Assembly: GCA_028534125.1 (NCBI GenBank)
Contig: CM052821.1
Span: 53,010,001 to 53,074,000, forward strand
Origin: Lama glama
Taxonomy: Eukaryota
Reading direction: 5' to 3'
Length of the DNA stretch: 64,000 nt
In this document: in pieces, positions 11,569 to 64,000 of the stretch
Position numbering within the stretch: the first letter of the stretch is position 1
Layout: every line of letters begins with the position of its first letter
The notes under the pieces: model-generated
What the model was told of the DNA's origin: nothing
Database searches by the model: none
The model's input: only the letters and a program-made list of their open reading frames with translations
Made by a program: the position numbers and the translations under genes

Positions 11569-11688
11569 CTGGCGTGAAGAGGGTGTGGGCCAGGCAGGAC
11601 AGGGAGCAGCTCTCCACACTGCCTGCCTTGCTGCAGGACAGCTGGGCCTGGGGCGAGGCCTTGGCCCGAGAAAGGCACTTGCCCGTCT
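11569..11688 (-). CDS. SCUBE1: SCUBE1 exon 11 (spacer), 120 nt
   Basis: Acceptor CTTTCTCCTCAG|AG, donor CCAG|GTAACC; [40 protein letters not shown]. Confidence 0.95.
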
Positions 11689-18050: not shown

Positions 18051-18176
18051 TCAGCAATGGGACCCCGGCGTCAGCTCGCCCTGGGCACTCACCCAGCGAT
18101 GGGACCCCGGTGACAGCTCGCCCCGGGCACTCACCCAGCGAAGAGACCCTGGTGACAGCTCGCCCCGGGCACTCAC
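18051..18176 (-). repeat. 3 x 42-bp tandem repeat starting at the exon 10 5' splice site
   Basis: Units 18135-18176, 18093-18134 and 18051-18092; each begins GTGAGTGCCC(G/A)GGGCGAGCTG on the minus strand. Confidence 0.95.
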
Positions 18177-18299
18177 CCACACAGTCCTTCTGGTTCCAGT
18201 GGAGGCGCCTCCCGGGGGGGCAGACACACGCGTAGCTGCCCTTGGTGTTGACACAGCCCTGGTCACAGCTCCCGTTGTTCATGCTGCACTCGTCCACAT
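18177..18299 (-). CDS. SCUBE1: SCUBE1 exon 10 (calcium-binding EGF9), 123 nt using the first donor
   Basis: Acceptor TGCTCCCAG|AT, donor GTGG|GTGAGT; [41 protein letters not shown]. Alternative in-frame ends at 18135 and 18093. Confidence 0.93.
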
Positions 18300-19760
18300 C
18301 TGGGAGCACAGGTAGGAGTGAGGGCAGGAGGGCGGCTGGGCGGGGCTGGCAGGCGGGGCCTACCCAGGACGGGAGGGCCCTGCATCCCCTGACCCTGACC
18401 CCAGCCCGGTACTGTCACCAGCTGCAGACACGCGGCCGCACACGAGCTCGCGCACACACAGGGCTCCCACAGACACCAGCACACACCCCTCCCCCGGAAC
18501 CTCGGCGGTTTGCTGAACCTGGGCCGCTGTGCTCGGACTTGCGGGAGGGCCGAGAAGTGGTACAAAATAAAGTTCCAGTCAGGTCTTGTGGGGCACGGAA
18601 TGCCCAGCACAGGCCCGGGTCATGAGGCCGTATCTCACTGCGGGACCCCGGACAGGCCCTTCCCAGCCCGTTTCCTCTCCCAGGGCGCAGGAAGTCACCT
18701 TTAGGGCCCTGCCTTCCTTCGGGTCAAACATCCCCCTGAGGGAAGCAGCAGGCCCAGGGCAGCTGGTGAGCTGGTGCCCATGTTTCTGGGAGTCCCTCCA
18801 GAAGACGCTGCAGCTCCCCCCAGGAGCTCCCCCGCCCCCCAGCACCGCCAGGCCTGAGCCTGCCCGACCATCACGGCTGCCCAGCTGAGGAGGTGTGGCT
18901 ACCACCCCAGGTCCAGGAAAGGGAGGGACTGGAGACCGTGGGGCCTTTCTTGACTTCTCCACTTTCACACCCCAGGCCTGTACACCTCCACGTCCCATCA
19001 CCCGTGGATCCTACATACACCTAGACCTTCCCTCTCCCACATCCCTCCCACCCTGCCAGAGCCAGCAGCTCTCACTCCCCTGTCTGGAGCCGTGTCCTCA
19101 CCGGCCCTGGGTTCCACTCTCCTAAAGGTGGCAGCCAGAGGGATCTTGTTACATGACCTTGACTACGTCACACCCCTGCTTAAACCCTCGGATGGTTTCT
19201 CATCGTGCTGGGAATAAAACCACAAGTCCCCTGGGGGCTCACAGAGCCCTGTGTCCCTTCTGTCACCATGCGCCCCTTCCTTCATGGGGCTGTAGCCCCA
19301 CGGGCTGCATCTCGGTCCCTCTGTGCTCCCTCTGCCTCAGTGCCTCTGCACACGCTGAACCCTCTGGCACGCTTCCCCTCATCTTGACCCAAACCGTCCT
19401 CCTTTAGGATCCCCCCATCTTCCCCACACTCCGCCCTTCTCTGTTGTCACCCCCTCCCACTGGAATGAACTGGTTAAGGGATTCTCTGTGTAGCCGTCCT
19501 CCCTTCCAGACCGGGGTTCCCCAGCAACTGCTGTTCACAGGCCTGTGCCCACAGGCTTGCTGAGGCCTGGCACCCAGGGGATACTTTCTGCCCCTCCCCC
19601 CATCCTCCTGCCTGGCCCTTGGCTGAGCCCCTCCCCCCACCAGTCCCTCCCAGGCCCGTCAGAGTCAAGGTCAGGGGCGGGGTGTGGGGTACAGTGCAGG
19701 TGGCCATGTGGCCGGCGCGTGCCTCTGGGGGGAGGTGGCCCTGGCGGGCGAGCTGCAGAC

Positions 19761-19877
19761 CTCCGCAGTGGGTCGTCCCATAGAGCGTGTAGCCGCGGTG
19801 GCACAGGCACTGGAAGCTGCCCGGGGAGTTGATGCAGACGTGGTCGCAGGTCCGCTCGAAGGAGCACTCGTCGATGT
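19761..19877 (-). CDS. SCUBE1: SCUBE1 exon 9 (calcium-binding EGF8), 117 nt
   Basis: Acceptor GGCCACCAG|AC, weak donor GGAG|GTCTGC; [39 protein letters not shown]. Confidence 0.95.
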
Positions 19878-35900: not shown

Positions 35901-36012
35901 ACAGGGAGGACGCCGGGGGACAGGGAGGACGCCGGGGGACAGGGAGGGGGCTAGGGGACAGGGAGGGGGCCGAGGGACAGGGAAGGGGCTGGGGGACAGG
36001 CAGGGGCCGGGA
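35901..36012 (+). repeat. G-rich 19-bp minisatellite, about 5.5 copies
   Basis: acagggaggacgccggggg x2 exact, then acagggagggggctagggg, acagggagggggccgaggg, acagggaaggggctggggg and a partial copy. Confidence 0.85.
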
Positions 36013-44058: not shown

Positions 44059-44286
44059 NNNNNNNNNNNNNNNNNNNNNNNNNNNNNNNNNNNNNNNNNN
44101 NNNNNNNNNNNNNNNNNNNNNNNNNNNNNNNNNNNNNNNNNNNNNNNNNNNNNNNNNNNNNNNNNNNNNNNNNNNNNNNNNNNNNNNNNNNNNNNNNNNN
44201 NNNNNNNNNNNNNNNNNNNNNNNNNNNNNNNNNNNNNNNNNNNNNNNNNNNNNNNNNNNNNNNNNNNNNNNNNNNNNNNNNNNNNN
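44059..44286. other. Assembly gap (228 N) in SCUBE1 intron 6
   Basis: Run of N next to a degenerate CA-rich tract (about 43870-44058). Confidence 1.
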
Positions 44287-62845: not shown

Positions 62846-62910
62846 AGGGACTGGTTTTCTGGAAAGCTAGAACTGGAAGGGACTGGTTTTCTGGAAAGCC
62901 AGAACTGGAA
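62846..62910 (+). repeat. 32-bp tandem duplication
   Basis: agggactggttttctggaaagc(t/c)agaactgga x2, one mismatch. Confidence 0.9.
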
Positions 62911-64000
62911 AGGAGCTTAAAGAGCATCTAGATGAAGCCTCAACTTTTCCACTGAGGGGGCCAAAGTCCGCCGGACTGGACCCACCCTGGGCCACGCAGT
63001 AGCCATTAGTGTCCACATGGAGCCTTGGCTCCCAGTGCCTTGACCCTCAAGTTCCTCATTCTTTCCGTCACATCAGGAGGTGGCTTACGAGGCATTGCTG
63101 GTTCGGGGGTCACTCACCCACTCAGTCACTTACTCCTACACTTTTGCTGGGCAGCACCTTTGTGCAGGCCCAGCTCGAGCGCCCACCTGTCACAGGTGCA
63201 TTTTCAGCTAAGACCAAGTCCTTTGCCACGGCTGCTCACTGGGTGGGCAGGCACCGTGTACAGGACAGACGGACAGATGGGCAGACAGAGAATTCAGACT
63301 GTGGCTGACTCCTGGCATGTCAGGTGAGAGCAGAGAGGCTGGGCTGGTCTGCCCTCTCAGAAAGCGGACACGGACACCAGCCTCCCTTCAGCTCCTCACC
63401 TCCTGTGCCTTGGCCAGTCCTGCCACTGGGAGCCCCCGGAAAGCTGCCTCTGTGAGGTGGGGGGGGAGCTTGTCTGATGGCTGTGAGGACCACGTGGCAG
63501 TCTGTGCAGACACACGTGGACAGATGTCTGCAAGACTGCAGGTGCCACGGGAAGGTCAGCATCACTGGGTGGGAGGGTGGGCCTGGTTTCACCAGCTCTA
63601 CTTCCCACATCTATTCTGGCTCGTTGTAAGGTGTGTGGCCTGGAACTTGCTGGGTTTCCTCCTCTATGAAGCAGAGGAGGAAGGCCACTAAAGAGAGTCA
63701 AGAGGGAATGGCTCCCGCTCAGGGTCCCCGACCACCCCTCTCAAGACGCAGGTGGTGCTCAGTAAAGGCTGGCCTGCACCACCCGCCAGCCCCCTTTGGC
63801 CAACTCTACAGTGTCTGTCCCTTTGGAGCTGCACACTCACCTTCTCCTCCATCTCTTTCCAAGGATAATGGTCCTTCCTCTTCCTGCCCCTGAAGTTCCC
63901 TAGCTGGTCACTAGGCGTCACCACAAGCACATCCAAGCCCCTCTGAGGCCCAGGTGAACTGGGAACACAGGCTTGTGAGACTTTCTTACCTCCTGAGATT

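What the first reader, a model, noticed from the sequence alone, without database searches (positions are those of the whole stretch)
18051..18177. Tandem triplication of the SCUBE1 exon 10 splice donor creates an in-frame, Cys-adding array of 5' splice sites
Seen: a 42-bp unit starting exactly at the exon/intron boundary is present three times, giving three TGG|GTGAGT donors (exon ends at 18177, 18135, 18093). 42 is a multiple of 3 and the extension has no stop, so the later donors insert [14 protein letters not shown] (+14 aa) or additionally [14 protein letters not shown] (+28 aa) between EGF9 and the spacer. Each unit adds one cysteine. Established: among duplicated equivalent 5' splice sites the one nearest the downstream acceptor is often favoured, and a 165-207 nt exon is still a normal size. 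Inference: the main isoform in this species may be longer than orthologues and carry extra cysteines (+14 leaves one unpaired, possibly affecting oligomerisation or secretion). If copy number varies, the repeat would act as a VNTR that tunes protein length through splicing.
Basis: partly seen in the sequence, partly recalled or inferred. Interest (0 to 1): 0.8.

Follow-up and report, generated by a model that had tools for sequence, protein, structure and literature searches.

The report
Splice-donor minisatellite in camelid SCUBE1
A 42-base stretch that starts at a splice site of the SCUBE1 gene is present three times in a row in this camelid, which is a known kind of repeat in which the extra splice sites are usually silent or little used, so it is real but most likely ordinary.

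Summary
A 42-bp unit is present exactly three times (18052-18177, minus strand, 91% alike). It starts at the last base of the final EGF exon of SCUBE1, giving three identical donors TGG|GTGAGT. The extensions are in frame, stop-free, and add one Cys per unit.

The gene is SCUBE1 of a camelid close to Camelus, but not Camelus. The triplication looks lineage-specific: 16 read-through ORFs from other animals carry one copy. None of 147 SCUBE1 proteins inspected has the insert, and the Camelus RefSeq and GenBank models join the exons canonically.

The closest precedents argue against it:
- In human F7 IVS7 (37-bp donor minisatellite) only the first donor is used. Pseudo-sites changed to this same 9-mer (TGG/gtgagt) still did not compete.
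- ABCA7, CBS and IFI6 show minor use of the next one or two copies.

Most likely the canonical donor dominates and +14/+28 aa forms are absent or minor. This is a new member of a known kind. The scan noted similar donor repeats elsewhere in this genome (LPCAT1, RANBP2, TERT, MICALL2).

The parts
18177..18299 (-). SCUBE1 exon 10 (EGF9, calcium-binding EGF), 123 nt, phase 1. Its last base, G at 18177, is the first base of unit 1.
   Evidence: PF07645 EGF_CA 4.5e-08, PF14670 6.4e-09.
18136..18177 (-). Repeat unit 1. It contains the authentic donor: exon end 18177, GT at 18176-18175, 9-mer TGG|GTGAGT.
18094..18135 (-). Repeat unit 2, carrying pseudo-donor 2 (would-be exon end 18135). Using it would insert [14 protein letters not shown] (+14 aa). 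It differs from unit 1 at 3 sites.
18052..18093 (-). Repeat unit 3, carrying pseudo-donor 3 (would-be exon end 18093). Using it would insert 28 aa. It differs from unit 2 at 4 sites and is followed by unique intron sequence (AGACCCC...).
11569..11688 (-). SCUBE1 exon 11 (start of the spacer, [10 protein letters not shown]...), 120 nt. It has a strong pyrimidine tract and a cag acceptor, and is the common acceptor for all three donors.
   Evidence: (blocks identical to Camelus ferus SCUBE1, P0282).
19761..19877 (-). SCUBE1 exon 9 (EGF8), 117 nt, with donor GAG|GTCTGC.

Best explanation
This is a small lineage-specific minisatellite (3 units of 42 bp) whose first unit spans the exon 10/intron 10 boundary of camelid SCUBE1. 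The tandem duplication copied the last base(s) of the exon plus the first ~41 bases of the intron twice. Intron 10 therefore begins with the authentic donor followed by two sequence-identical 5' pseudo-sites, 42 and 84 nt downstream.

Inferred mechanism: as in other donor-spanning minisatellites, the first donor met after the exon is chosen. It sits next to the exon's purine-rich sequence, and all the G-runs of the repeat lie downstream of it. The copies are spliced out with the intron, so the normal protein with the V-E-TGKC junction is the main product.

Because the unit is a multiple of three and has no stop, any leaky use of the copies would give in-frame +14 or +28 aa forms that escape nonsense-mediated decay. 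I expect these at zero to a few percent.

Shown here: the repeat, its register, its frame, its absence in other animals, and the gene identity. Inferred: which donor is used.
For: - Structure and register of the array.
- Single copy in 16 read-through ORFs from other animals' contigs; 13 of them read at least 20 codons past the donor without a second GE[CWRL] copy.
- Of 147 SCUBE1 proteins inspected, 137 have the canonical V-[E/D]xxxC junction, none has a GECPG repeat insert, and Camelus ferus XP_032348273 (988 aa) and the Camelus dromedarius KAB1270005/6 models are canonical.
- F7 IVS7 precedent: a 37-bp minisatellite whose first monomer spans the boundary. Only the most upstream of 5-9 identical donors is used. 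Pseudo-sites raised to TGG/gtgagt, the same 9-mer as here (CV 91), are still unused; only CV 100 sites compete.
- LMNB2 and PDGF use only the authentic site. IFI6 and CBS use the authentic site plus the next two. ABCA7 retains one 25-bp VNTR unit in 2 +/- 1% of transcripts.
- G-rich elements between competing 5' sites favour the upstream site. Each unit carries two G-runs, so there are four in the 60 nt after donor 1 against two after donor 3.
- No special RNA structure distinguishes the donors (z = 0.55).
- Five of the seven unit differences change the amino acid, which gives no sign of coding constraint.
Against: - No RNA evidence from this species could be obtained.
- With two strong globin/consensus 5' sites, use of the intron-proximal (downstream) site rises steeply beyond about 30 nt separation and is about 100% at 45 nt or more, in HeLa cells and in vitro. 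Here the spacing is 42 nt and the site is fairly strong (CV 91).
- In the F7 tests the upgraded pseudo-sites competed with a weaker authentic site in a different gene context, so transfer to SCUBE1 is by analogy.
- The Camelus models are gene predictions from a sister lineage, and it is not known whether that lineage has the triplication.
- All three donors are still intact after seven substitutions, but the chance that none fell in the first 11 of 42 positions is about 0.12, so this says little.
Confidence: 0.7

Rival explanations
1. One reading: the downstream donors are used substantially or predominantly. The main SCUBE1 protein of this lineage would then carry 14 or 28 extra residues, with one or two extra cysteines, between EGF9 and the spacer.
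For: The three 9-mers and the next bases are identical, the frame is kept and there is no stop. Strong duplicated 5' sites about 45 nt apart splice almost wholly from the intron-proximal copy in globin constructs. CBS and IFI6 do use the next two copies. Exons of 165 and 207 nt are normal sizes.
Against: F7 pseudo-sites with this very 9-mer are not used at all when an upstream site exists. ABCA7 uses its second copy in about 2% of transcripts. G-runs that would become exonic lie between the donors. No SCUBE1 protein seen carries such an insert, including the Camelus models. The pattern of substitutions between units looks neutral.
Confidence: 0.2
2. The array is a copy-number-variable VNTR. 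Its length modulates SCUBE1 splicing efficiency or expression rather than protein length, as reported for F7 and ABCA7.
For: The human donor-spanning minisatellites F7 and ABCA7 are polymorphic, and ABCA7 repeat length correlates with expression and with skipping of the next exon. Units 83-93% alike can still misalign.
Against: There are only three units, and they differ at 7-17% of sites, which suggests the array has been stable for a long time. No population data could be read. Fourteen DNA runs of four coded organisms hold 0.90-0.99 of the words of the surrounding 10 kb, but that figure does not resolve the repeat.
Confidence: 0.15
3. The triplication is an assembly artefact, and the real genome has a single unit.
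For: Raw reads could not be checked.
Against: The three units differ from each other at 3, 4 and 7 positions in an additive, tree-like pattern. An assembler stutter would not produce that. There are no indels, no N nearby, and the register is exact.
Confidence: 0.03

Closest known systems
Human F7 intron 7 37-bp VNTR (Borensztajn et al. 2006, PLoS Genet, PMC1557585)
   Same: It is a minisatellite whose first monomer spans the exon-intron boundary, so the authentic donor is followed by sequence-identical 5' pseudo-sites at a fixed spacing (37 vs 42 nt). The donor is TGG/gtgggt, one base from TGG/gtgagt, and the paper tested that exact variant. The monomers are G-rich and contain G triplets.
   Different: F7 has 5-9 near-identical, polymorphic monomers; here there are only 3, differing at 7-17% of sites. 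In F7 most pseudo-sites are out of frame, whereas here every copy is in frame and adds a Cys. Donor use was measured in F7 and was not measured here.
Human ABCA7 intron 18 25-bp VNTR (De Roeck et al. 2018, PMC5954066)
   Same: The VNTR starts with the GT of the exon 18 donor. Retention of one unit, meaning use of the second donor, is seen at low level (2 +/- 1%).
   Different: It has 12 to several hundred units, and its 25-bp unit shifts the frame and triggers NMD. Its length correlates with skipping of the next exon and with disease risk. None of that is known here.
Human CBS intron 13 and IFI6 (6-16) intron 2 minisatellites; LMNB2 and PDGF intronic minisatellites (as summarised in PMC1557585)
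   Same: The donor is reiterated by a boundary-spanning minisatellite. In CBS and IFI6 the authentic site plus the two next copies are used; in LMNB2 and PDGF only the authentic site is used.
   Different: They have many more copies (10-26) and other unit lengths (81 and 100 bp for PDGF and LMNB2). I did not read the primary papers for these.
Engineered duplicated consensus 5' splice sites (Hodson et al. 2012, PMC3413131, and the globin work cited there)
   Same: Two equivalent donors tens of nucleotides apart compete for one acceptor.
   Different: Those sites have very high U1 complementarity and sit in artificial constructs, and there the downstream site wins at 45 nt or more. Natural arrays with sub-consensus sites behave the opposite way.

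Membership tests
Donor-spanning intronic minisatellite (F7 IVS7 / ABCA7 / CBS / IFI6 type) | Head-to-tail repeat with a unit in the minisatellite range | tested here: met
   Period 42, 3.0 copies, 91% matches, no indels, score 207. Three copies is the low end for the class.
Donor-spanning intronic minisatellite (F7 IVS7 / ABCA7 / CBS / IFI6 type) | First monomer spans the exon-intron boundary and contains the authentic donor | tested here: met
   Unit 1 starts at the last exonic G (18177). TRF extends the match to 18179, that is TGG of the exon.
Donor-spanning intronic minisatellite (F7 IVS7 / ABCA7 / CBS / IFI6 type) | The donor consensus is reiterated intact in the following monomers | tested here: met
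   TGGGTGAGT and GGTGAGTGCCC are found at 18177, 18135 and 18093.
Donor-spanning intronic minisatellite (F7 IVS7 / ABCA7 / CBS / IFI6 type) | Authentic (most upstream) donor used mainly or only | not testable with these tools
The only indirect evidence is that Camelus SCUBE1 models are canonical.
Donor-spanning intronic minisatellite (F7 IVS7 / ABCA7 / CBS / IFI6 type) | Copy number polymorphic (VNTR) | not testable with these tools
   No reads could be laid. The word shares cover 10 kb and do not resolve the array.
SCUBE1 orthologue | Run of EGF_CA exons, a spacer without Pfam hits, three Ephrin_rec_like (GCC2/GCC3) repeats, then CUB | tested here: met
   EGF_CA exons at 51.0k, 46.8k, 27.7k, 22.3k, 19.8k and 18.2k. 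Three PF07699 hits and PF00431 CUB lie downstream; the spacer exons have no hits.
SCUBE1 orthologue | Closest named relatives are SCUBE1, not SCUBE2/3 | tested here: met
   The exon 15 ORF is 83% identical to Bos mutus SCUBE1 against 41-45% to SCUBE2 representatives. Exon blocks of 18-65 residues are identical to Camelus ferus SCUBE1 P0282.
Functional alternative 5' splice site exon | Two or more donors each supported by transcripts | not testable with these tools
   No reads. No fragment or full-length protein with the insert appears or 53-57.

The most novel reading that the evidence does not exclude
In this camelid lineage the second or third donor is used for a large share of SCUBE1 transcripts. 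The secreted protein would then carry a lineage-specific 14- or 28-residue, Cys-containing insert between EGF9 and the spacer. Unequal crossing-over in the array would change protein length in 14-residue steps.
Probability: 0.12. Interest if true: 0.55.

Novelty: new member of a known kind. Interest (0 to 1): 0.27.

Why it matters
If the extra donors are silent, this is one more natural example of a donor-spanning repeat. Its small added value is that every copy is in frame, so leaky products would escape decay and be easy to count. That makes it a clean natural test of upstream-wins versus downstream-wins 5' splice site choice at 42-nt spacing with a CV-91 site. If the extra donors are used, a conserved secreted platelet and endothelial glycoprotein would carry a lineage-specific insert with unpaired cysteine(s). 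Either way it warns annotators of camelid genomes not to extend exon 10 into the repeat.

Tried and rejected
- **Reads.** So there are no junction, depth or copy-number data. The one exception in kind was a six-residue motif touching that place, used in local scripts to mark camelid-like proteins that had already been fetched.
- **The look-up of encoding contigs.** The species and DNA of the 16 read-through ORFs therefore stayed unknown, and no intron alignment could be made.
- **Metagenome scan.** A scan for the inter-unit junction found 0 matches.
- **Naming the gene.** The exon-by-exon word search, PDB and ESM Atlas gave no names. The name came only from the representative search plus cluster look-ups.
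- **Spliced model.** Exons were searched singly by reference.
- **Human-labelled proteins.** Two proteins labelled human (P0173, P0281) appeared in result lists and were left out of all scripts.
- **RNA structure.** Folding shows nothing that would mask a particular donor, so that idea was rejected.
- **Coding constraint.** Testing for constraint on the units is too weak with only seven differences.

Full report
**Observation**

Read on the minus strand, the stretch contains a 123-nt, phase-1 exon (18299->18177). It encodes a calcium-binding EGF domain (PF07645 4.5e-08, PF14670 6.4e-09). From its last base onward a 42-bp unit is present three times with no indels. Tandem Repeats Finder reports period 42, 3.0 copies, 91% matches and score 207 at 18052-18179. 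This is the strongest tandem repeat in the 64-kb window.

The units are U1 18136-18177, U2 18094-18135 and U3 18052-18093. Each starts G|GTGAGTGCCC. The 11-mer GGTGAGTGCCC occurs only at 18177, 18135 and 18093 in the whole window, and no further diverged copy (at most 9 substitutions) exists. All three donors therefore share the 9-mer TGG|GTGAGT.

In the exon's frame the units read [28 protein letters not shown] and [14 protein letters not shown], without a stop and with one Cys each. The next exon begins at 11688 behind a strong pyrimidine tract, and with the first donor gives ...[12 protein letters not shown].

**Is the triplication real and how old is it?**

U1 and U2 differ at 3 sites, U2 and U3 at 4, and U1 and U3 at 7. 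The differences are strictly additive and four are CpG transitions. This tree-like divergence speaks against an assembly stutter. By inference, it also means the duplications are not recent. Raw reads could not be consulted (see the section on what could not be tested).

**Which gene and which animal**

The same strand carries six EGF exons in the window, at 51.0k, 46.8k, 27.7k, 22.3k, 19.8k and 18.2k. After them come spacer exons without Pfam hits, three Ephrin_rec_like repeats and a CUB exon. This is the SCUBE architecture.

Word searches of single exons, PDB and the ESM Atlas gave no names, so the representative search was used. The exon 15 ORF is 83% identical to a protein that NCBI calls SCUBE1 of Bos mutus. 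It is only 41-45% identical to proteins named SCUBE2. A regional word search with that protein returned over a thousand SCUBE1 entries.

Window exons 11, 15, 16, 17 and 19 share identical blocks of 18-65 residues with Camelus ferus SCUBE1, XP_032348273, 988 aa. The window differs from it at about ten residues by eye, for example DTCAADC against DTCEADC. The window is therefore SCUBE1 of a camelid that is not Camelus. The exon is the last EGF exon before the spacer. That is consistent with "exon 10" if each EGF repeat has its own exon, though the exon number itself was not checked against an annotation.

**Distribution**

A word search with the genomic ORF that runs from intron 9 through the array found 16 read-through ORFs from contigs of other, unnamed animals. 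All show ...KDCV-GE... once and then unique intron sequence. Thirteen of them continue at least 20 codons past the donor without a second copy. The sequence after U3 in the window is recognisably the same intron as in those ORFs: RRAWALAPP... in the window against RRAWVLASPLPP... in P0010.

The ancestral state is therefore a single donor, and the array arose by duplicating the boundary plus the first ~41 intron bases twice. Among 147 SCUBE1 proteins inspected (two labelled human were left out):
- 137 have the canonical V-[E/D]xxxC junction.
- 6 lack that part of the protein.
- 4 are odd gene models: yak skips exons 11-14, pig and donkey read into intron 10, and grey whale has an extra exon.
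- None has a repeated GECPG insert.

The Camelus ferus RefSeq model and two Camelus dromedarius GenBank models are canonical.

**What could not be tested**

There are therefore no junction counts, no depth and no copy-number data.

A metagenome scan for the inter-unit junction found nothing.

**How it most likely works**

The arrangement is a described class. Borensztajn et al. (PMC1557585) list genes in which a minisatellite's first monomer spans an exon-intron boundary, so that the donor is reiterated in the intron:
- F7, LMNB2 and PDGF use only the authentic site.
- IFI6 and CBS use the authentic site plus the next two.

In F7, 5-9 identical sites (TGG/gtgggt) lie 37 bp apart. Only the most upstream is used. 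Knocking it out activates the next one, and so on. The result is independent of cell type and of monomer number.

Most relevant here, pseudo-sites changed to TGG/gtgagt were still not used. That is the same 9-mer as in this array, with a Shapiro-Senapathy value of 91. Only perfect CAG/gtgagt sites competed, at 70-90%. In ABCA7, whose 25-bp VNTR begins with the exon 18 donor, retention of one unit accounts for 2 +/- 1% of transcripts.

G-rich elements lying between competing 5' sites favour the upstream site. Each unit here has two G-runs, so donor 1 has four within 60 nt downstream and donor 3 has two. Those of U1 and U2 would become exonic if donor 3 were used. Predicted RNA structure does not distinguish the donors (z = 0.55). 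Five of the seven differences between units change the amino acid, so there is no sign of coding constraint, although the numbers are small.

**The counter-argument**

With consensus-type globin sites the intron-proximal copy takes over beyond about 30 nt and is used about 100% at 45 nt or more, in HeLa cells and in vitro, because both sites are occupied by U1. The spacing here (42 nt) and the fairly strong site leave room for this. The F7 results reconcile the two bodies of work, since only perfect sites shift splicing downstream, but they come from another gene.

I therefore put about 0.7 on "canonical donor dominant, copies silent or minor". I put about 0.2 on substantial use of the copies, of which about 0.12 is for a longer major isoform.

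**Comparison and novelty**

By structure this is a member of the donor-spanning minisatellite class. Unit length, boundary-spanning first unit and intact reiterated donors were all tested and met. Its behaviour (donor use, polymorphism) is untested. It differs from the human examples in three ways:
- It has only three copies.
- The copies are diverged.
- Every copy is in frame, so leaky products would not be removed by NMD.

The scan has noted similar donor repeats elsewhere in this genome (LPCAT1, with a follow-up reaching the same classification, and RANBP2, TERT, MICALL2). This is a new member of a known kind and of modest interest.

Noticed in passing
window 44059-44286: A run of 228 N lies inside a SCUBE1 intron, between the EGF exons at 46.8k and 27.7k. 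It was left as it is.
   Followed up: no
window 35901-36011: A G-rich 19-bp tandem repeat (5.9 copies, 86% matches, score 145) lies in a SCUBE1 intron. It is the second strongest tandem repeat in the window.
   Followed up: no
window about 18186-18231 (exon 10): This animal's EGF9 reads GSYACVC and HWNQKDC. Most mammals read GSYECVC; Camelus reads GSYTCVC. HWNQ is shared with Camelus, pig, horse, dog and mouse; other mammals have HWNR. The position after the conserved aromatic residue therefore varies among camelids.
   Followed up: partly
window 19755-19765 (exon 9 donor): The exon 9 donor is GAG|GTCTGC, a visibly weaker match to the consensus than the triplicated exon 10 donor.
   Followed up: no
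proteins P0160 (Equus asinus) and P0150 (Sus scrofa): Database SCUBE1 models of donkey and pig read from exon 10 into intron 10 (KDCV-GECPG...) before rejoining later exons. Intron-10 read-through or nearby cryptic donors are therefore already present in annotations of species with a single donor copy.
   Followed up: no
same genome, other windows (notes s1-268351, s1-857077, s1-862821, s1-855326): Earlier notes of the scan report donor-spanning tandem repeats at LPCAT1 exon 3, RANBP2 exon 9, TERT exon 2 and MICALL2 exon 15 in this genome. A genome-wide count against other mammals might show whether this genome is unusually rich in them.
   Followed up: no
window 62846-62914: A 32-bp unit is present 2.2 times at 94% identity (score 124) near the upstream end of the window.
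   Followed up: no
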